64,000 nt of DNA from Anthoceros angustus (GCA_010909165.1 MU008150.1:248001-312000), one strand, 5' to 3'; shown: positions 39,445-50,074, counted from the first letter of the stretch. Numbers and translations are program-made. The notes: generated by a model from the letters alone, not told the origin.

Positions 39445-39789
39445 TCAGAGCATGAGCCGACGATCCAATGCCCCAGAAAAGCAAATGCGATGCAAGCCCG
39501 CCTGACACCCGAATCCAGGCCAGCGGGACCACTGTTACAGAATTGTTTGCGCGTTTCTTGACGTGGAAGGATGCAGGGACATCGCATCTGCCGTGGCCTG
39601 TGTGGTGTACATGTACGTGTGGTTTACCCGTTTACCGTGAGGGTTGCGCGGTAAGCCCAAGCCCTGGGGGCTGCCGCCGCCGGGGCTTGGAGCAGAAGCT
39701 GGTGGGCAGAGGGTGGGAGGGAAGAAGAGCTGCCTTGCTTGCCTGCTTGCTGGGTTGTCTTGCCCTTCTCTCTGTGTTGCGAGCAGGCC

Positions 39790-39824
39790 ATGGCAAGTGG
39801 TGGGGATGCAGCAGAAGCAGGAAT

Positions 39825-39856
<32 letters not shown>

Positions 39857-40902
39857 AGGCAGCAGGGTGGCAGGAGAGCTTGATTCCGGGGCTGCCGGAG
39901 GAGGTTGCCTTCAAGTGCCTGACCCACGTCCCGCGGCGGTGCCACCGGGTGATGCGCAGGGTGTGCACACAGTGGGACAGGCTGCTGGACAGCGACGAAT
40001 TCTTCGAGGCTCGGGCGAAGGCGAAGCTGGCGGAGCCGTGGATCCACGTCCTCACGCGGATCCAGGGGAGCCGGAACCCGTGGCGGGCCTTCGACCTGCA
40101 CTCCAGGAGGTGGATCAAGTTCCCGGACCTGCCATCGTCCGTGTACGAGAAGCTCTCCCTGGTGGGGCTGCAGTGCCAGGTGGTGAAGGGAAAGCTGGTG
40201 CTGTGCGGGGGGCGATGGCAGGGCTCCATCATCAAGGACGTGCTGGTGTACGACCCCAGGGCGGACAGGTGGAGGGAGGGGGAGGGCATGCTTTCGCACC
40301 GGGCGGATTTCGTGAGCGGGGTCATCGAAGACCAGCTCTACGTCGCCGGGGGGAACAACGGGGTGCAGGGACGGACCAGGTCCGTGGAGCGCTACGACAT
40401 CGAGCAGAACCGCTGGTTCCCGGCGCCCAGCATGAACTACGACACTGCTTTCTGTCTGGGGGTCACCTTGGACGACAAGTTCTTTGTGCATGCCAAGGGC
40501 GGGCTGCCGGAGGAGACCCAGGTCTTCTGCCCCTTTAGGGGGCTCTGGAGCAGCTTCGAGGCCGAGATGCTCACCTCGCACCGGATCCATCCCTACGTTG
40601 TCAGCAATGGTCAGCTGTACAGGGCGGACATGCTGCCCACCAAGTTCGAGATCAAGGCGTATGATGTGGGGAGCGATACCTGGATCAGCATGAAGCCCAC
40701 TCTCACCATCTTCCATCCCACCAAGTATGTGAAGGAGCTGGTGGACCTGGACCAGAAGCTGGGGATTGTCATGGATGACTTCAGTGTTGCTGTTGTGGAG
40801 ATCGACCTGCCCAACCACAGCCTCAAGTACCAGTGGTTCTACTTGACTGCAGCAAATCCTTCCACCGACAGGATTGTCAGCTGCCATGTCCTGTATGCAT
40901 GA
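39790..40902 (+). CDS. F-box/kelch-repeat protein, intronless
   Basis: F-box LIPGLPEEVAFKCLTHVPRRCHRVMRRVCTQWDRLL, and kelch repeats with GG..Y..W (LVLCGG...VLVYDPRADRW; LYVAGG...VERYDIEQNRW). ATG 39790. Confidence 0.93.
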
Positions 40903-41140: not shown

Positions 41141-44100
41141 TCATGGCCGGTTGTGCCTGAACAGGATGAAGGACACAAAGGCTAAGGAAGCGAACATGAG
41201 GCTCATACCTCCTAGGGCTACAAAATCGAGACCGATCCGGGAGTAGTCGAGGGATCGGAGGTCGCTTATTCTGTCCCACACAAACTCACCGTCCAAGTCT
41301 GCAAACCGCTTGCAGGGGCAGGCTGGGCAAGGGCTGTGAGGAGGAGCAGGGCATGCCATGCATGACGGCTGCTTGGTGTCGCAGAAGAAGCTGATGGATG
41401 TTAGGGTGTTGGTGACGTACTGGTAAGGGTTCGCCCAGAAGAGCCAAGTGTAGGAATTGGGTACAAGCAGCTTGGGGACCACCACGCCTGATGCTGTTAT
41501 CCACAGTGACGAGATGATGGAAACTGCGAAGGCTGCAAGAATCGGCACCGGCGTTGCTATGGTGAGCAGCATCCCGAAGTAGGTCACAGCCAGAGTGAAC
41601 ATGAAGAGTCCCATCCAGTACTGCACGAAGTTGGCCAGAGAGTCTGTTGCGATGCCAGCCATTCCGTTGCCGATGGCCACGAACACGAGCGTGGCGATGA
41701 GGAGATAGGGCATCTCAGCCAGAGCCCAGGATATCGGGTAGAAAATGGCTGCGTACATTCTGGCCCTCCTCTCCCGGAAGTACGCCAGCCGGTCCGTGCC
41801 AATCTGGGGTATGATATTGTTGGCTGTCACCACTCCGATGAGCATGATCTGGATGTACACAAACAGGGAGCGGGATGTAACAGCGAAGCTGTCCTTCTCG
41901 CCGATCTGGAAGTAGAGAGAACCCAGCAGCAGACCGATGGATATGGAAGCCGTGAGTCGGCCGAAGGTGTACTGGACATTCCTCCATAGGAACTTCTGTG
42001 TCCGCAGAAACACCATGGCCGCCTGCTTCCAGTACGAGGCTGCATATGCGGTATCCACATCCTTGATGACATGCCTTCTGCTTTTCCTGCGTAGTTTGCC
42101 CAGCTCCTTGCTGTTGTCCTCCCCCAACCTGCTCTCTCTGTAGACTGTGGCGAAGTCATGGACGGGTGCTCTTCTCCTGATTCCAGCTCCCAGGATATCA
42201 AGCACATAGGTGATGGCGTTCTGGGAGCTGTGGTACTCAGGTACCTTTGGGATGGACGTGAAGTACCTCAGCAGCTCGGTGCAGTTCCAGCCCACAGGCC
42301 CGAAGTAGGCCTGCTCTCCCCCAGGTCCGAGGATGAGCACGCTGCTGAAGGCACTGAGCATTCTGGCACTGGGGTGCTGGATGGTGCTGATCACAGTCCG
42401 CCCCGTGGAAGCGATAGTCTGCATGGCTTGCAGGATGTTTCGAGCACCGATGCTGTCCATACCGGAGGTGGGTTCGTCCAGGAACAGGACGCTTGGGTTC
42501 GCAGCCAGCTCCACTGCAATGGTTATCTTTTTGGCTATCTCGTAGGTCCTCCCTGTTGCATCTCTGAGAGACCCCACCAGCTGGTCACTCACAGGATGGA
42601 GATCCAGTAGTTCTAGGATCAGCTCCACATGCTGCTCAAGGTAGCCCGAATAGACGCTGTTCCCCAGCCGCAGGATGGCGCTAAATCGTAGCGATTCTTT
42701 CACGGTCAGGAAGGGTTGATGGGCATCCAACTTCTCAGCGAAGCCCGAGATGCGTGAGAATGTGGCAACACTTGGCTTATACCCGTTCACCAAAATCTCG
42801 CCCAGTTGCTCACCGTGGGATGCCCTGTTTGCCAGACACTTGAGGAGGCTGGTTTTACCGGATTTGGTGCCCCCCAGTAGTGCTAGCATCGCTCCTGACT
42901 TGCAGTATCCCGAGACTTTGCTCAGAATCACTTGGCTCTGCCCCTTGGCGTCCTTGCAGGTGAATGTGAGGTCGTGGAATGAAATTGCCACAGGCGTGAC
43001 CGGGATGTGGTGGTCAGACCATCCTTTCATCCCCTCTTGATCACTGGCGCATGCCTCTTCGTCATAGCCTTCCCTCTGCTGTTTACTGAGAAAGTGCGAT
43101 CCAACATGACTGTCGCCCCCAGAAGACGAGGAGGATGGAGACTCTTCCACCTGCAAGACCATAGAAGTGGTCTTTTCTTGGGGGAGAGAGTTGTTGAGCT
43201 CGGTAAACCTTAGTCTGCTTATTGCTCGGTGTGCAAGGATTAGTATGAGAACTGTCCACCCCAGAATCACGGCGAAGGAAACCATTATCCAACCACTCCC
43301 TGTCTTCAGCTGGTAATATTTGAGATAGGCGTCGCCAGTCTGCATGTTGGGATACACCTCGCAGAATGGCAAGTCCAGGTGGAGGTGGCAGGAATCCTTG
43401 TAAGCACTACCTCCGATTTGGGTGATGCAAAAGGCCATGTTTGCCCAATGAATTGGATTGGCGTAGTACATCCACTTCCACCACTTGGGAATGTTGTGTG
43501 GGTAGATGAGAAAGCCGGAAAAGAGGAGGAATATGGAAACGAGTAATCCTGTGAGACGGTTCCCACTTGAGGTGTTAAGATTTCTACTGAATACCAACAA
43601 GCCGGAAGGGGGTTGCATCTTAGAACTGCTTGTTTGTGACCGACCAGGACACGAAAAGGAAAGTGTTCGAGGCTTACCACCCAGTGCATTTGCAGCCTCC
43701 AGGATTGGTGAGATAGCGCTCAGTAGGAAGAAGAGGCATGATCCAAAGAATGCTATTGAGCACAGAAGTCCCCAGTACACGAAGAAGTGCAGTCCATCGT
43801 CCTTTGTTGAGAGGCCTGCTCCAAAATAAACGCAGACACAGTAGAGAGTTCCCTGCCAGTCCAAGTCCAGTACAACAATTTGTTAGATGTGCCCACCTCT
43901 GAAAGGCAATATCTGGGCTTATTAGCTTGAGGATGATTTATCAGGATCCACCTCAATTATGGACTGTGGCAAGGAAATGGCACTATGAGCAACAACGTAG
44001 GAAGAAGCTCTGAAGAAGCGCTGGTCCCGTTGCTTGTAGAATATAGGCCGTTGCATCATGTAAACAGGTGCTTGTACTGAGTTGATGAGCATAATACCCA

Positions 44101-47100
44101 TTGTGGACACAAATCCGAGCCCGCGGATAGCATTCATTTCCAGGATTCCGGGTTTGCCTCCCAGCCCCTTAAAGATGGTTCCAGCAACCAAACTCAGGAT
44201 CAACACCTGCAGGTTCAGGCAAAAAGGGCATTTTTTAAAGATGCGGTTGTGGGGCGAACCAATGTATGGCACGACCTCTATCTCCTTCCTCAAGGAAAGG
44301 GAGGCTGGTGCGTAATTCTGTAAAAGAGTGCCTACCTGCAAGAGTCGGAGTTGAAAAAGGATGGTGAGTCTCTTGGTAAGTTTGAGCTGGCGCTTGATGA
44401 GCGTCAGTGTGGATGGCCACCACCGTTGGACATGCTCTTGCGAGAATTGGCCCTCCACCATCTCTTCCCCATCCTCTGCATTTGCCTGAAAGGAACAAGG
44501 GCACAGAATTTCATCATCGTTTTTCACGAGCATTCCTAGCCTCCACTTCATCCTTCAAAATATGGGCAGTACGCTTGATGAGTTTCAAGAGGAAGGAGCA
44601 GTTTGAGCAATACGTAACATCGAGCTGGAAGCAGACCTGGGTTTCAAGTGTGCGTTGCAGTTGCAGACGAACATGACCTCGTGCATTGGATAGAAGAGTG
44701 GACACCCTGGCAGCTTGGTTGGTCTGGTGGTCCTGTGACCCAAGAGCGAGGTACTGCATTCCGCCAGCTGGGCTTGAGATAGCGGTCACCACATCCCCAA
44801 CCTGAATGTTCCCTGTGCTCTCGATCCCTCGGCTGTGATCCACGTTGCCGGACAGCTTGGCCACCACCACTTCTGCAGGACGTGAAAACAAGACGATGGA
44901 GCTGAGTCGGCAGGCACATGACAGCGCTGCGCTTGGGCAGGCACCCACACAATCTTAAGCTTCACCAATGACTACATGTAGCACTCACTGGATGGCCATG
45001 GCCACACTTGTGCGACACATACCAGGGCCGAAGAACACTTTGGATGTGGAGCCATCGTCAAGATGCTCGGCCCGCTCCGCCTTGCGAACTGAGAGACCCA
45101 AGTTGGGCTCGCTCTCCACCCAGAAGGTGTGCAAAACCTCGTCGCTCGTCACGATCCGCATCACATCCCGACGGAGCTCCGAGTCTCTGTAAGCCTTGAG
45201 CAGGTCCTGGAGGTGGGGAACGGGCAGCCCGTCCTCCACGTACTGAGACCCCTCGCCCGCTGCAATCTCCTGAAGAAACTCTCCCGAATCGACATGCGCG
45301 GGCTTCACAAACCTGTGGCACCCAACAAATTGCCGATCTCGTCACTCTGCTGTACACCGAGGGGGAGGACACAACAAAGTGCTCTGGTAACTCGCTCAAT
45401 GTTGCAAGCGCAAGCTTGCAATTTCCTCACCCGAGCTCCTCGAAGTAGTGCAGCGCGTCCTGGCGCGGGCCCTGGTACAGGATCCTGCCCTCCCCGAGCA
45501 GGATGACTCGATCGAACAGGTGGAACACCTCCTGCGACGGCTGAACCAGCGACATGACTGCGGAGCACTGCTGGAACCTGCTGATGGCCCTCAGCGTGCA
45601 CACGAGGTCGTAGGTGGCCAGCGACTCCTGCCCCGAGCACGGCTGGTCGTACAGCATCACGGCGTACGTCCCCATGGCGATCTCCGCCGTGGTGAGCCGG
45701 TTCCTGTCGTTGTCCGTGATCCCAGCCCCCGGGTTGCCCACAATCTCGTTCTCGATGCCCTTCAGCCCCAGCACATGCAGAATGTACTCCAGGTATGGGT
45801 CCTGCCCCTCCACCAGCGCGTGCGCGAAGAACTTGCGCAGCTGCGGCGAGAAGTTCTTGGGCCGCAGCCCCTGGGTGCACTCCCCCGCGAACTCCAGCGT
45901 CTCCCGCACCGTCAGACCCGGCAAATGCCTGCAATCGTTCACCAGTCAGGCCGGTGGAATCCGAATTCTCGCAGTCTGCAGCAAACTGGTTGCATCCACA
46001 TGTCTCACTTGTTGAGCTGCCCGTTGATGTAGGCGATGAGGCGAGTGAGCACAACCTCCGACGCGTCCCGCCCGTTGTACTTCACCCAGCCCTCCAGCTT
46101 CACCGTCTTGCTGGTCTCCGCTCTCCCAGCAAGGACCTGCCAGACACGGCACAAGCCTCTCATCACCGACTGTGACAAGCATCCATGGACCAAACAACAT
46201 GGCGAGCTGGCCCGTAGCTGGGTGGTACCTTGAGGAGGGACGTTTTGCCGCTCCCGGGAGGACCCAGCAGCAGCGTCATGGAGCCGGGCATGATGTAGCC
46301 GTGGACGTCGTGGAGGATCTCGTAGGTGACGGCGGCCTTGGATCGGTCGCGGAGGAAGGGGTTGAGGAGGAGGCCGGCGGTGATGTTGTACACCTTCTTG
46401 CCGAAGGTCTGGAAGGCCTGGTCCTGCGGCAGCAGCTGCGCGGTGTAGCTGATGCCCCCGAAGCGGACCACCTGGCGGGGGACGGGCGGGGTGAGCCTGG
46501 CCACGTCCCGGAGGTAGTTCACGATGCCGTCCTTCATGATGAAGTCCATGCCCACCAGCATCGGCAGCTGGTCCCCGCTGCCGCCATCCACATCGTGGTG
46601 CAGGCGCTGGAACGCCTTCTCCGCCTCCGCCAGCATCCCCTTCTGCTTCAGCAGCCGGTACATGTGCAGCGCCACGTCCTGCACATTCTCCGTCGCCGCA
46701 TGCGCCAGCTTCCGCGCCACGTCCGGGGTCTGGGAGCCCTGCAGCCCCGGCAGCCTTGCCCTGGTCATGGGCGTCTCGCTTCCCCGCACCGGCACCACGA
46801 ACACCTGCTGGCAGCAGCACAAGAAGCAGACGCCTCACTCTCACATTGCAACAATGCGGGAACGAACGCGTCAACGAGAAGCAACGCCAGGCTGAAGCAG
46901 CCGAGGACGCACCTGGTCCCGGTGCGGGGTCTGGGTGGCGGGGAAGTCGAATCCGGGGGAGGGCAGGAAGGCGGACTGGCCCGGGGTCGGGGCGGACATG
47001 AGGCTGAAGCCGGAGACGAGGTGGTCCACCGACGCGGGGTCGAAGCTGTCCGTGCTCGTGTTGTTGTAGAAGCTGTAGCCGTTGGCGCTGGCGCTGGAGA

Positions 47101-47242
47101 TCCTGCTGGTTCCATCGGCCCCGTCCCCGTCTTCCAGCACCACGGCGTGCTCGCCCTGCCACCAGATGGGCCTCGCCGCCGGCTTGGACCGGAAATGCAG
47201 CGGCGAGCGCATCCAGCTGCCCCGCGGACTGGGACTGGCCAT
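41141..47242 (-). CDS. Full-size ABCG (PDR-type) transporter, NBD1-[PDZ-like]-TMD1-NBD2-TMD2, ~10 exons, roughly 1,700 aa
   Basis: NBD1: ILHDVHGYIMPGSMTLLLGPPGSGKTSLLK, LTVRETLEFA, SLVQPSQEVFHLFDRVILLGEGRILYQGPR. TMD1: QRPIFYKQRDQRFF, FSGFLIYPHNIPKWWKWMYYANP. NBD2: GKTSLL, IAVELAANPSVLFLDEPTSGMD. TMD2: DRLAYFRERRARMY. ATG 47242. Confidence 0.93.
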
Positions 47243-47750
47243 GGCCGAGGCCAAGGATTTGGAGAAATCTCGAAGCGACTGCCGTCGCTCCCGTTTCCGA
47301 CTCCGCTCCCAAGCTCCCAAGCTGCTGTTACTCTACATGCAATGGTTCTTGTCGAATTGGAATGGCGTCTTCTTGCGACTGCGGGGCTTGGAGGTGGACT
47401 CCAGCGTCTGCCATGGAGACTCGGTTCCTGGCTGCCAAGGCTTTGTAGTGGAGGGTCCAGGATCCCAGTGGAAGGGGAGGGTGGACGCGAATCTGGGCGA
47501 ACGTGGGGTCTTGAAACTCGAGCGGAGTGTGGTGCCAATGGGGAATCGGAAAGCGCCAAGGCCGGCTGCTCCACGCGGCGGCAGCCGGCTCCATGGCAGG
47601 TTGCTGCCAAGTGGCGCCTTGGTGAACTCTGGGTGGGGAGAGGGACGGCCGAGGCTACTGCTCAGACTCACAGTGGAAGGGGGAAGGGGGCGGCGTACTG
47701 TGTAGGTCACGGAGGGAAGACAGGAAGACAGCAGCCGACCCGACAGGAAA

Positions 47751-50074
47751 ATGGGGAGCCTCGCTTTTGCGCCTGGGGCAGCATCACCCGGGCCGGGCCG
47801 ATTCCGATTCCCATCCCTTCGCTCCCGCCCCTGTCGGGCCTGGCGGCTGTGCCGTGTGGGTGCCACCACGGCGCGGGCTGCCACGTCGGCGGAGCCCTTG
47901 GTGCATCTCCTGCGGCACAATCACAATGCGGCCGCCTCCGGGGGATGCTCTCCGGAGGATGCCCTGCGCCGGGGCCGCTGGGTGAAGCTCATTTGTGGGG
48001 CGAGCTTTGAGGTAGGAAGGAGGGTGGATTGCTTTGCTTTCCTTCGCGTTGGAGGGTTGAGCATTGAGAATTTAGTTGGTGGAGCAGGATTTGGCACGAG
48101 TGCGGAATTTGGCTCTGGTCTACACGCTTGCCGGAGGTTAGTTTCCCGTGATGCAAGCGAGGTGCGAAAGGACAGGGCGCCCTGGAGCAGGGTGGCTGAT
48201 GATGGGGTGGTGTGGTGTGGTGTGGTGTGGTGGGCAGTGGACTGCATCGACTGTGCTGCCGACCCTGCTGTGGTGGGTGCTGTGGTGGAGGGTGTGGAGA
48301 CGGCAACCCATTTGGCATCGGCTTGTGCTGCTGTGGAGTGGCTCAAGCCCTGGCTCATGGTGAGCATCAACGATGACCGAGACCCCCATTTTCGGAAAGC
48401 CGGTGAGTCTGTCTTGCATTATGTCCCAGCCCAACCATGTACGACATGTGCTCACTCACAGCTTTTCGCACTGGTGCTGCAGAATTCGATGCCGACCAAT
48501 GTCCTGCCGACTGCCCCCGTCCTTGCGAGCGGGTGTGTCCTGCGTCCGCTATAACCTTCGGCCAGCATAGGGTTCGTGCTCCTGCTACTGCTTCTGCGTC
48601 TTTTCGCAATTCCTTGCTTCTCTTGCACATTACATGACATGACCCTTGGGACTGTGGCGGGACACAGGAAGGTGTCACCACCGAGAGATGCTATGGGTGC
48701 GGAAGGTGCCTGCCAGTTTGCCCCTTGGCCTTGATCCGTAAGTATGTCCATGCCCTATGTCAGCTCTCGAGTCGATAGTGGCCGCAGCCTACTGCAATGA
48801 GGATAACCCTCAAGCACGGAATTTCCAGGAGCAAATACCTACATTAGAGGATTGGACACGGTCCTTGAGCTTCTGAGCAGCAAACATGTCGACGCTGTTG
48901 AGATTCACACAGGAGCAGGGTAGCTTTTCGTCCCACCAGTAGCTTTGCTTTCCAGGATGTTTGCTCAACTAGCTCTCCTGCACAACTCACCATATCAGTT
49001 TGTCTCTGTTGTAGCCATTTGGAAGCTTTTGAAAAGCTGTGGACCAGTTTGGCAGGGGCTGTGCAACAACTGAAGCTCGTGGCTGTGAGTGCTCATTGTC
49101 TTCTCGCTTTCTCGTTCGGCTATGTACACCCTCCCCTTTTTCAGATCACACAAATGAATTGCGTGCCTGCCATTGTCTTGCTTGCAGGTGAGTGTACCTG
49201 ACCTACGCGAGTCCATGGTTCCGAGCTTGGCAGCAATGTATACGATCATGCAACCCTCTTTGAGAAGCTTGAATTTGTGGCAGGTCCCCTTCCCTTCATT
49301 TCGGCAGCTAGTATCCAGCGGCCTCGCTTGCTGCTTCTTGCACTAATCACATTACTGTGTCTTACTGTAGCTGGATGGACGGCCTATGAGCGGAGACATA
49401 GGTGCAGGTGCCACACGGGCTGCAGTGGCACTTGCTTCTCGTGTGGCTTCCTCGTTAGATCGACCTCCTGGTAAACAACTTTCTTACTTGCGTTGAACAG
49501 AGAGTGAACTGTTTGCGACTCAACTGGCGGGACCTCGCTTCTTTCTTCAGGCTTTCTTCAGCTCGCTGGTGGAACCAATGCTTACACACTGGAAGCCTTG
49601 AGGAACGCTGGTTTCTACACGGATAGTAAGGCACACTGACTGCCTGTGGACAAGTGATTTCTTTAGCGAACGTCACAGTGGGGAACCACGTATTTCTAAA
49701 ACCAACTCACACGAGGTCTTGCTGCTGCAGTCACAGGTGTGTCTGGAAGGGAAGTAGCCATAGCTGGTGTAGCTTATGGCGGGTATGCCCGGAAGGTACG
49801 GTTTCTTTACAGTCAAAATGTACCTCCTTGCCCCTACTGGGTACCTAGGATCTTATGCACTACTGGTATTGCTGCCCTGTAGATTGTGAGTAAATATCTT
49901 GCCGAGATGGAGAAGAGTGAGCAAAACGAGCAAGACACAAAGAAGCTCATGCCTCATCTCCGGTTGGAAGGTCATCCAACCCTTCTCTTCGAAGCGGTGA
50001 AGCAAGCCAGTGCCTTAGTGCAACCTAGCAAGTCTGGAACAGTAACTACAGTCTGTGAAATGGCTAGAATTTGA
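47751..50074 (+). CDS. ldpA: LdpA-like iron-sulfur (2x[4Fe-4S]) protein with probable plastid transit peptide
   Basis: WVKLICGASFE, DCIDCAAD, PWLMVSINDDRDPHFRKAEF, CPADCPRPCERVCP, RCYGCGRCLPVCP and a C-terminal GVAYGGYARK|IV...LEGHPTLLFEAVKQASALV. These match cyanobacterial LdpA as I recall it. The N-terminus is rich in Ser, Arg and Ala. Confidence 0.85.

What the first reader, a model, noticed from the sequence alone, without database searches (positions are those of the whole stretch)
42360..46270. Both composite ATP sites of the ABCG look degenerate: a possible non-hydrolysing, receptor-like ABC protein
NBD1 keeps Walker A (GPPGSGKT). Its signature is GITDNDRNRLTTAE instead of G(I/V)SGG(Q/E)xKRVT, and its Walker B/D-loop is MLYDQPCSGQES instead of LFMDEISTGLDS, so the catalytic Glu is naturally Gln, the classic hydrolysis-dead E->Q change. 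NBD2 keeps Walker A/B (GGTKSGKT; LFLDEPTSGMD). Its Q-loop is FAEKLD instead of YCEQND, its signature is GRTYEIAKK instead of GLSTEQRKR, and its H-loop is TIQHPS instead of TIHQPS. Typical plant and fungal PDRs have one degenerate and one canonical site; here the NBD1 signature needed for the canonical site is also lost. The long intact ORF, including an ~800-codon last exon, argues against a pseudogene. Together with the PDZ insert, this suggests a repurposed sensor or regulator, by analogy with the sulfonylurea receptor.
Basis: partly seen in the sequence, partly recalled or inferred. Interest (0 to 1): 0.78.

Follow-up and report, generated by a model that had tools for sequence, protein, structure and literature searches.

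The report
Plant ABCG with two crippled ATP sites
This is an intact, expressed plant gene for a large ABC "pump" in which both ATP-burning sites depart from the working pattern in the same way in about 40 land plants, so it is an old family that probably binds ATP without using it to pump.

Summary
Observation confirmed. The gene has ten exons, 47242-41144, about 1681 codons, all introns GT-AG. RNA contigs of the same species confirm six introns and a relative's contigs the other three. Of 40 differences to a relative, 28 are synonymous.

The deviations are not private decay. In 38 orthologs plus the window (liverwort, lycophyte, fern, conifer, Amborella, many angiosperms):
- NBD1 Walker A lysine: 39/39.
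- NBD1 Walker B Y-D-Q (catalytic Glu replaced by Gln): 39/39.
- No sequence has the SGG signature in NBD1.
- The NBD2 Q-loop Gln survives in 4/39.
- The NBD2 His is shifted by one place in 33/38.
- The NBD2 P-loop was lost at least three times independently; the window keeps it.

Canonical plant PDRs in the same alignment carry the textbook motifs.

The PDZ-like insert is real at fold level. It is older than the degeneration and also sits in relatives with canonical motifs. A sister clade that includes Marchantia MpABCG27 is degenerate too.

"Non-hydrolysing" is well supported by comparison but not shown biochemically. "Receptor like SUR" is untested. I found no paper describing the motif loss. 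The scan also holds notes on the PDZ insert here and at a second locus.

The parts
41141..47242 (-). Whole gene: full-size ABCG (NBD1 - PDZ-like insert - TMD1 - NBD2 - TMD2). Ten coding exons, 5043 nt = 1681 codons, plus the stop at 41143-41141.
   Evidence: tblastn with orthologs; GT-AG junctions read from the sequence; RNA-contig joints; Pfam ABC_tran and ABC2_membrane.
46913..47242 (-). Exon 0: 110 codons from the ATG at 47242. Poorly conserved N-terminus; ARPIWWQGEHAVVLE matches the N-terminus of a Selaginella ortholog.
   Evidence: tblastn with P0137; joint 46801->46910 (cut +3) in runs X1 and X2.
46229..46804 (-). Exon 1: N-terminal domain and NBD1 Walker A (GPPGSGKT, 46241-46264).
46009..46136 (-). 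Exon 2: NBD1 up to the Q-loop (YINGQLNK; one extra residue compared with canonical PDRs).
45431..45928 (-). Exon 3: NBD1 core with the degenerate signature (45682-45723), Walker B Y-D-Q and D-loop (45622-45660), and H-loop position without His (45535-45552). The most conserved part of the protein: 64-80% identity to clade members.
45023..45312 (-). Exon 4: linker after NBD1. Its end (WVESEPNLGLSV, 45087-45122) aligns with the first strands of the PDZ-like domain in the ortholog model.
44637..44872 (-). Exon 5: body of the PDZ-like insert (78 codons). Canonical PDRs have only about 16 residues in these alignment columns.
   Evidence: PDZ fold matches for the orthologous segment P0001:445-566.
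43678..44485 (-). Exons 6-8 (44485-44336, 44206-43952, 43852-43678): first part of TMD1.
41144..43548 (-). Exon 9 (about 801 codons): end of TMD1, linker, NBD2 (Walker A 42851-42874, Q-loop 42725-42742, signature 42527-42553, Walker B/D-loop 42452-42487, H-loop 42368-42385), and TMD2 with a six-Cys extracellular loop (41291-41392).
43549..43677 (-). Intron 8: 129 nt, in frame, no stop. Spliced out in a relative's RNA contig but retained in the contigs of the same species and two other relatives.
   Evidence: joint 43547->43677 in X19; X1 record 1 runs through it; absent from all orthologs.

Best explanation
The locus encodes an intact, transcribed and selectively constrained full-size ABCG protein. 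It belongs to a land-plant-wide clade, called here the YDQP clade, that lies inside the early-diverging lineage of plant PDR-type transporters carrying a PDZ-like insert. In this clade ATP is most likely a bound ligand, not a fuel. Shown: NBD1 keeps an invariant P-loop, and its Walker B aspartate is always followed by Gln instead of the catalytic Glu. The NBD2 signature facing that site is replaced by a different but conserved motif, G[KR]T[FY]EIAKK. Inferred: site 1 binds ATP stably and does not hydrolyse it, as engineered E-to-Q mutants and the degenerate site of yeast Pdr5 do. Shown: site 2 has lost its partner signature (SGG replaced by acidic residues), its Q-loop Gln and the canonical position of the switch His. 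In liverwort, fern and angiosperm orthologs it has also lost the P-loop glycine or lysine. Inferred: the clade's conserved function does not depend on ATP hydrolysis at site 2. The protein is therefore not a conventional hydrolysis-driven pump. Its strongly conserved TMDs work as an ATP-bound or ATP-gated membrane module (facilitator, channel, receptor or scaffold). Which of these it is remains unknown.
For: Motifs are present at the stated places. Counts over 38 orthologs plus the window: NBD1 Walker A Lys 39/39; Y-D-Q 39/39; SGG 0/39; NBD2 Q-loop Gln 4/39; NBD2 P-loop Gly 6/39 and Lys 25/39; Walker B Asp replaced by Glu in 32/38; His shifted by one place in 33/38. Canonical plant, oomycete and algal PDRs in the same alignment carry the consensus motifs. 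The clade is monophyletic (SH-aLRT 100, stem 0.59-0.63) and follows the species tree. NBD2 Walker A changed state at least four times on the tree, three of them inside the clade. The NBD1 core is the best conserved part, 64-80% identity against 48-63% for NBD2. Spliced RNA contigs of the same species and of relatives confirm the introns. Of 40 listed differences to a relative, 30 lie at third codon positions (binomial p = 8e-8) and 28 are synonymous, a rough omega of 0.14. A sister clade that includes MpABCG27 shows the same pattern: NBD1 P-loop kept, catalytic residues lost.
Against: There is no biochemistry; the case is inference from motifs. In this species NBD2 keeps GGTKSGKT, LFLDEPTSG with the catalytic Glu, the D-loop, and a His one residue off its usual place. 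That His is itself conserved in 33/38 and the Glu in 31/38, so some constraint on NBD2 catalytic-type residues persists and slow or unconventional hydrolysis is possible. ATP binding at NBD1 is inferred from P-loop conservation, not measured. The same-species RNA contig retains the in-frame intron 8, so the dominant isoform is uncertain. The RNA status of the runs is a guess by the tool, supported only by the spliced joints.
Confidence: 0.65

Rival explanations
1. In this species and other non-seed plants it is still an active, low-turnover transporter. It would be driven by site 2, using the intact NBD2 P-loop, Walker B Asp-Glu, D-loop and the neighbouring His, with an unconventional partner loop from NBD1. 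Complete loss of catalysis would then have come later and only in some lineages.
For: NBD2 Walker A and Walker B are canonical in the window, Cryptomeria and Selaginella. The shifted His is conserved in 33/38 and the catalytic Glu in 31/38. TMDs are well conserved, 50-60%.
Against: The NBD1 signature that must close site 2 has Asp/Glu where the phosphate-contacting Gly-Gly sits, in all 39 sequences. The Q-loop Gln is Lys or Arg in most. The same orthologous protein has persisted, with comparably short branches, in lineages that lost the NBD2 P-loop. This argues that the shared function does not need site 2.
Confidence: 0.2
2. One reading: a receptor or regulatory subunit that uses the PDZ-like domain to hold a partner (for example a channel) and reports nucleotide state, like SUR with Kir6.x.
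For: The orthologous insert segment gives a PDZ-like fold (top 50 structural matches are all PDZ domains, Z 6.3-8.2). NBD1 is conserved for ATP binding without hydrolysis. A Cys-rich extracellular loop and a conserved C-terminal [KR]HN tail are present. The paralog MpABCG27 changes phosphorylation in a receptor-kinase pathway mutant (bioRxiv 10.1101/2024.08.14.607940, read).
Against: The PDZ-like insert and the Cys-rich loop are also present in relatives with fully canonical ATP sites, so they do not mark a switch to a receptor role. No partner is known. SUR belongs to another subfamily (ABCC) and keeps one consensus site (PMC7756269). Pfam finds no PDZ.
Confidence: 0.15
3. A decaying gene, lineage-specific degeneration, or a sequencing or assembly error.
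For: None beyond the unusual motifs themselves. NBD1 alone scores below Pfam's ABC_tran cut-off when scanned exon by exon.
Against: All ten exons are open with GT-AG introns. Spliced transcripts with 0 mismatches exist. The same substitutions occur in 38 orthologs from liverworts to angiosperms. Synonymous differences to a relative are in excess.
Confidence: 0.02

Closest known systems
Canonical plant PDR / full-size ABCG transporters (AtABCG29-43 type; 'V3-Type' of Cho et al. 2020, PMC8359288)
   Same: Reverse NBD-TMD-NBD-TMD architecture. ABC2_membrane and ABC_tran domains; best NCBIfam match is TIGR00956, the PDR family. NBD1 already lacks the H-loop His and the NBD2 signature is already non-consensus (LSTEQ), so site 1 is the weak site in both.
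   Different: Canonical PDRs keep SGG in NBD1, Walker B Asp-Glu in both NBDs, the NBD2 Q-loop Gln and HQPS. They lack the roughly 100-residue PDZ-like insert and the Cys-rich TMD2 loop. They carry ABC_trans_N and PDR_assoc, which the window's pieces did not match. Identity to the window is only 19-38% by part.
'V1-Type' early-diverged full-size ABCGs (Cho et al. 2020, Physiol Plant, PMC8359288)
   Same: Described as an early-diverged group found in charophytes, mosses, Selaginella and Amborella. The lineage found here has that position and includes Selaginella and Amborella proteins.
   Different: The paper says the type is absent from other angiosperms; here orthologs were found in many magnoliids, monocots and eudicots. 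The paper holds no occurrence of 'Walker', 'degenerate' or 'motif'. That the groups are the same is inferred: its supplements are not held.
Yeast Pdr5 / Candida Cdr1 (asymmetric fungal PDRs; PDB 7p03, 9iuk)
   Same: Closest solved structures by sequence (E 8e-73). One composite site is naturally non-hydrolytic and keeps ATP bound (PMC8421411).
   Different: In Pdr5 the other site is fully canonical and drives transport. Here the second site is degenerate as well. The degenerate residues differ: Pdr5 NBD1 has Walker A Cys and Walker B Asn (alignment), while this clade keeps Walker A Lys and has Walker B Gln.
SUR1/SUR2 (ABCC8/9) and CFTR (ABCC7): ABC membrane proteins that are not pumps
   Same: They show that an ABC exporter fold can be reused as a regulator or a channel in which nucleotide binding is a signal (PMC7756269).
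   Different: A different subfamily and fold type (ABCC, type I exporter). They have one consensus site that does hydrolyse, and no PDZ-like insert. The resemblance is an analogy of use, not membership.
MpABCG27-type sister clade (Marchantia Mp7g16260, Physcomitrium, Adiantum, Zygnematophyceae)
   Same: Same insert-bearing lineage; sister to the window's clade (SH-aLRT 99). NBD1 P-loop kept. NBD1 signature, NBD2 Q-loop and H-loop lost. Walker B Glu replaced by Gln or His in the land-plant members.
   Different: Different replacement motifs (for example YFFDQLN, YVDKIDAY, LNY-PS; FLDNP in ferns). Paralogous, not orthologous. The algal members keep the NBD1 catalytic Glu.

Membership tests
Full-size ABCG / PDR family | Reverse domain order NBD1-TMD1-NBD2-TMD2 with ABC_tran and ABC2_membrane domains | tested here: met
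   Pfam on the exon pieces: ABC2_membrane 8.9e-36 and ABC_tran 5.7e-12 in exon 9; ABC2_membrane in the exon 6-7 ORF; a P-loop piece in exon 1. The ortholog P0001 has two stretches of each.
Full-size ABCG / PDR family | Match to the curated PDR family model TIGR00956 | tested here: inconclusive
   It is the best NCBIfam hit for exon 9 (E 1.3e-121) and exon 3 (4e-29). P0001 scores 638 bits against 1221 bits for a canonical plant PDR. Both are below the 1959-bit cut-off.
Full-size ABCG / PDR family | One consensus, hydrolysis-competent composite site (NBD2 Walker A/B, Q-loop and H-loop plus the NBD1 SGG signature) | tested here: not met
   The NBD1 signature is ITDND, the NBD2 Q-loop is Lys, and the His is displaced. 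SGG is absent in all 39 clade sequences.
Canonical plant PDR (V3-type) | Plant-specific ABC_trans_N (PF14510) and PDR_assoc (PF08370) domains | tested here: not met
   Neither was found in the window's pieces. P0001 has a marginal PDR_assoc hit (25.3 bits, cut-off 24.9). The canonical P0158 has both.
V1-Type early-diverged full-size ABCG (Cho et al. 2020) | Branches outside the main seed-plant PDR radiation; present in streptophyte algae, bryophytes, Selaginella and Amborella | tested here: met
   Trees: the lineage (SH-aLRT 99-100) is separate from the canonical PDRs plus Trebouxia, Klebsormidium and Mesostigma, and includes Selaginella, Amborella, liverworts, Zygnematophyceae and Chlorokybus. 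That these are the paper's own sequences could not be checked.
PDZ domain | PDZ fold (six strands, two helices) | tested here: met
   Tested on the ortholog segment P0001:445-566, which is about 50% identical to window exons 4-5. The AlphaFold2 model has pLDDT 67. All top 50 of 48,161 chains are PDZ domains, Z 6.3-8.2, 75-94 residues aligned. The exon-5-only model gave no significant Foldseek match.
PDZ domain | Match to a PDZ sequence profile | tested here: not met
   No Pfam family at E <= 0.01 for the exon 4 and exon 5 ORFs.
SUR-type regulatory ABC protein | ABCC fold with TMD0, association with a Kir6 channel, one consensus NBS | tested here: not met
   The protein is of ABCG type. No consensus site is present. 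Association with a partner is not testable here.
Pseudogene | Frame disruptions, no expression, neutral substitution pattern | tested here: not met
   Open exons, spliced RNA, 28 synonymous against 12 non-synonymous differences.

The most novel reading that the evidence does not exclude
Streptophytes have kept, since before the origin of land plants, two paralogous clades of PDZ-bearing ABCG 'pseudo-transporters'. They bind ATP at NBD1 but have given up hydrolysis at both sites. This would be a new functional class of ABCG protein (an ATP-gated or ATP-stabilised receptor, channel or scaffold), and it is absent from Arabidopsis, which would explain why it went unnoticed. A further guess: the acidic residues that replace the NBD1 signature pair with the lysines of the decayed NBD2 P-loop, so that site 2 closes without nucleotide.
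Probability: 0.3. Interest if true: 0.8.

Novelty: new variant of a known kind. Interest (0 to 1): 0.62.

Why it matters
ABC exporters with one degenerate site are common and much studied. A membrane ABC protein in which both composite sites are degenerate, yet which has been kept under purifying selection from liverworts to flowering plants, is unusual. It would give a natural system for asking what an ABC exporter fold does when it can bind ATP but not burn it.

It also corrects the picture of plant PDR evolution. The early-diverged lineage is not confined to non-seed plants and Amborella. It is present in many angiosperms, and no Arabidopsis or other Brassicaceae member appeared in the lists, which were cut at 120 hits. 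Automatic names such as "ABCG36-like", "PDR1-like" or "AtPEN3 homolog" imply a pump function that these proteins probably do not have.

Genetically tractable species carry members: Marchantia and Physcomitrium for the sister clade, and hornworts, if this genome is one, for this clade.

Tried and rejected
1. A Pfam scan of the insert exons found no PDZ profile.
2. An AlphaFold2 model of exon 5 alone (pLDDT 73.5) gave no significant Foldseek match in the PDB (best E 0.78; PDZ and PII-like chains mixed). Only the longer orthologous segment, which includes the strands encoded by exon 4, gave a consistent PDZ answer.
3. My first model started at the ATG at 46768. The RNA joint 46801->46910 and the Selaginella N-terminus showed a further 5' coding exon.
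4. The merged "window" row was corrupted for three NBD1 motifs by a misplaced exon 0 fragment. The exon-wise rows and the exact string search are the ones to trust.
5. The supplements of Cho et al. 2020 are not held, so the equation with their V1-Type rests on taxon distribution and tree position.
6. Seven literature searches found no description of the motif loss, of a PDZ domain in plant ABCGs, or of any ABC exporter with both sites degenerate. The library lacks most subscription journals, so this is not proof of novelty.
8. The pseudogene and sequence-error readings were rejected (see rivals).


Full report
**Anatomy**

The feature is a minus-strand, multi-exon gene. ORF listing and Pfam gave ABC_tran and ABC2_membrane pieces in the order expected for a full-size ABCG. 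I placed the junctions by tblastn with the best homologs and by reading the sequence. All introns are GT-AG and 80-151 nt long.

| Exon | Coordinates |
|---|---|
| E0 | 47242-46913 |
| E1 | 46804-46229 |
| E2 | 46136-46009 |
| E3 | 45928-45431 |
| E4 | 45312-45023 |
| E5 | 44872-44637 |
| E6 | 44485-44336 |
| E7 | 44206-43952 |
| E8 | 43852-43678 |
| E9 | 43548-41144 |

The stop is at 41143-41141. The total is 5043 nt, or 1681 codons, which matches the 1600-1690 residues of complete orthologs. Every search used exon references or stored orthologs, and the exon peptides entered alignments as separate fragments.

**Expression and constraint**

Contigs of a public run that match the window without a single mismatch (X1) carry joints at exactly my introns 1, 2, 4, 5 and 6, and at the E0/E1 intron. 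A relative about 93-95% identical (X19) shows introns 3, 7 and 8. So spliced RNA of this gene exists in this species and in at least three relatives.

One caveat concerns intron 8 (129 nt, in frame, no stop). It is retained in the contigs of X1, X2 and X6 and removed in X19. No ortholog has the corresponding 43 residues.

The table of differences lists 40 positions between 41162 and 41837. Thirty lie at third codon positions (binomial p = 8e-8). Twenty-eight are synonymous and twelve are non-synonymous, mostly conservative, which gives a rough omega of 0.14. The pseudogene reading is excluded.

**The observation**

Yeast Pdr5, shown in the PDB alignment, has its own pattern: NBD1 Walker A Cys, Walker B Asn, and NBD2 signature LNVEQ.

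**Orthologs**

The word search with exon 9 returned a block of plant proteins at 41-51% identity, then a drop to about 30% for oomycete PDRs. A second search with the N-terminal 600 residues of the Cryptomeria protein added a fern, a liverwort, Selaginella, Amborella and many angiosperms, followed by canonical PDRs at about 30%.

In an alignment of 38 clade members plus the window:

| Element | State in the clade |
|---|---|
| NBD1 Walker A | G..G.GK[ST] essentially invariant; Lys 39/39 |
| NBD1 Walker B | Y-D-Q in 39/39 |
| NBD1 signature | [IFL][ST][DE]x[DE] followed by an invariant LTTAE; never SGG |
| NBD2 Q-loop | Gln in 4/39 |
| NBD2 signature | conserved new motif G[KR]T[FY]EIAKK |
| NBD2 H-loop | His directly before Pro (xH-P, not HQP) in 33/38 |
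| NBD2 P-loop | sixth-position Gly in 6/39; Lys in 25/39 |
| NBD2 Walker B | Asp replaced by Glu in 32/38 |

The NBD2 P-loop is intact in the window, Cryptomeria and both Selaginella proteins. It is broken in Calypogeia (GGHKSGTT), Adiantum (GSSKSGRA), Amborella and all other angiosperms. On the tree this needs at least four changes, three of them inside the clade.

The comparison adds a stronger argument than the window alone could give. The same orthologous protein has persisted where site 2 can no longer hold a nucleotide.

**Where the constraint lies**

The NBD1 core exon is the most conserved part, at 64-80% identity to clade members. NBD2 is at 48-63%, TMD2 at 50-60%, and the linkers and N-terminus are much lower. 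Both halves of composite site 1, the NBD1 P-loop with Y-D-Q and the NBD2 EIAKK motif, are close to invariant. The P-loop half of site 2 is variable.

My reading is that site 1 is a constitutive ATP-binding, non-hydrolysing site and that site 2 is vestigial. This step is inferred from established knowledge: Walker B Glu-to-Gln mutants bind ATP but do not hydrolyse it, and the degenerate site of Pdr5 keeps ATP bound (PMC8421411, PMC7756269).

**Phylogeny and the insert**

Trees on the exon 9 columns show a lineage (SH-aLRT 99-100) separate from the canonical plant PDRs. It contains three groups:

- (a) Members with fully canonical motifs: Riccia, Marchantia AXG93_3426s1070, a second Calypogeia protein, Closterium, Spirogloea SM157, Chlorokybus and Cymbomonas.
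- (b) The window's Y-D-Q clade (100, stem 0.59-0.63), which roughly follows the species tree. The window is closest to the fern Adiantum (57-58%).
- (c) A sister degenerate clade with MpABCG27, Physcomitrium, a second Adiantum protein and Zygnematophyceae.

Groups (b) and (c) together have 99% support.

The roughly 100-residue insert between NBD1 and TMD1 and a Cys-rich loop in TMD2 are present in all three groups. Both are absent from canonical PDRs, oomycete PDRs and Capsaspora. The insert folds like a PDZ domain when the strands encoded by exon 4 are included. This was tested on the Cryptomeria segment (pLDDT 67); all top 50 matches among 48,161 chains are PDZ domains, with Z 6.3-8.2. The Z values are middling and no sequence profile matches, so I call it PDZ-like.

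Because group (a) has the insert together with canonical ATP sites, the insert cannot be evidence for a change of function.

**Comparison with what is known**

The lineage fits the "V1-Type" of Cho et al. 2020 (PMC8359288). That paper reports it as absent from angiosperms other than Amborella and does not mention nucleotide-binding motifs. MpABCG27 appears in one preprint as an "AtPEN3 homolog" whose phosphorylation rises in Mpbir mutants. I found no paper on the motif loss, on a PDZ domain in plant ABCGs, or on ABC exporters with two degenerate sites. SUR and CFTR show that ABC exporter folds can become regulators or channels. They are ABCC proteins with one consensus site, so this is an analogy of use, not membership.

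**Verdict**

"Probably non-hydrolysing" is well supported by comparison but unproven. "Receptor or sensor" remains a guess. In this species residual activity at site 2 cannot be excluded.

**Organism**

The organism is a non-seed land plant. Other agents' notes call the genome a hornwort, which fits the GC content, the short introns and the tree position. I did not test this.

Noticed in passing
window 39739-40902 (+): An intronless F-box/Kelch gene (F-box 1e-4, Kelch_1 2.7e-21) lies convergent with the ABCG gene, only about 240 nt from its stop. One RNA contig of run X1 (4026 nt) runs from inside this gene across the gap into ABCG exons 9-8, so the two 3' ends probably overlap or abut.
   Followed up: partly
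window 43549-43677 (-): Intron 8 is 129 nt, in frame and without a stop. It is retained in contigs of the same species and two relatives and spliced out in a third relative. If translated it would add 43 residues inside TMD1.
   Followed up: partly
window 41291-41392 (-): A six-cysteine extracellular loop in TMD2 (SFFCDT...CPACPCKRF). The whole insert-bearing lineage shares it, including members with canonical motifs; it is shortened to about four Cys in angiosperms and absent from canonical PDRs.
   Followed up: partly
window 41144-41161 (-): The C-terminal tail F-R-H-N-R-P belongs to a conserved [KR]-H-N-x-x-P ending in nearly all clade members. It could be a ligand for the protein's own PDZ-like domain. 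This is pure speculation.
   Followed up: no
P0240 (MpABCG27, Mp7g16260), P0242 (Physcomitrium), P0234 (Adiantum), P0045/P0249 (Zygnematophyceae): A second, paralogous clade of insert-bearing ABCGs is degenerate at both sites with different replacement motifs (YFFDQLN, YVDKIDAY, LNY-PS, FLDNP). The algal members still have the NBD1 catalytic Glu.
   Followed up: partly
It is probably the canonical-motif or the MpABCG27-type paralog. I could not read that locus.
   Followed up: no
window 46001-48000: The stretch richest in G+C in the window (65.6%) covers the 5' coding exon and the presumed promoter. A long antisense ORF there (46172-48010 +, 612 aa) is most likely a by-product of composition.
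   Followed up: no
window 42455-42487: Contigs of relatives match only these 33 bases (the NBD2 Walker B LFLDEPTSG codons) and then run on unlike the window (table 7). These are transcripts of paralogous ABC genes and say nothing about this gene.
   Followed up: no
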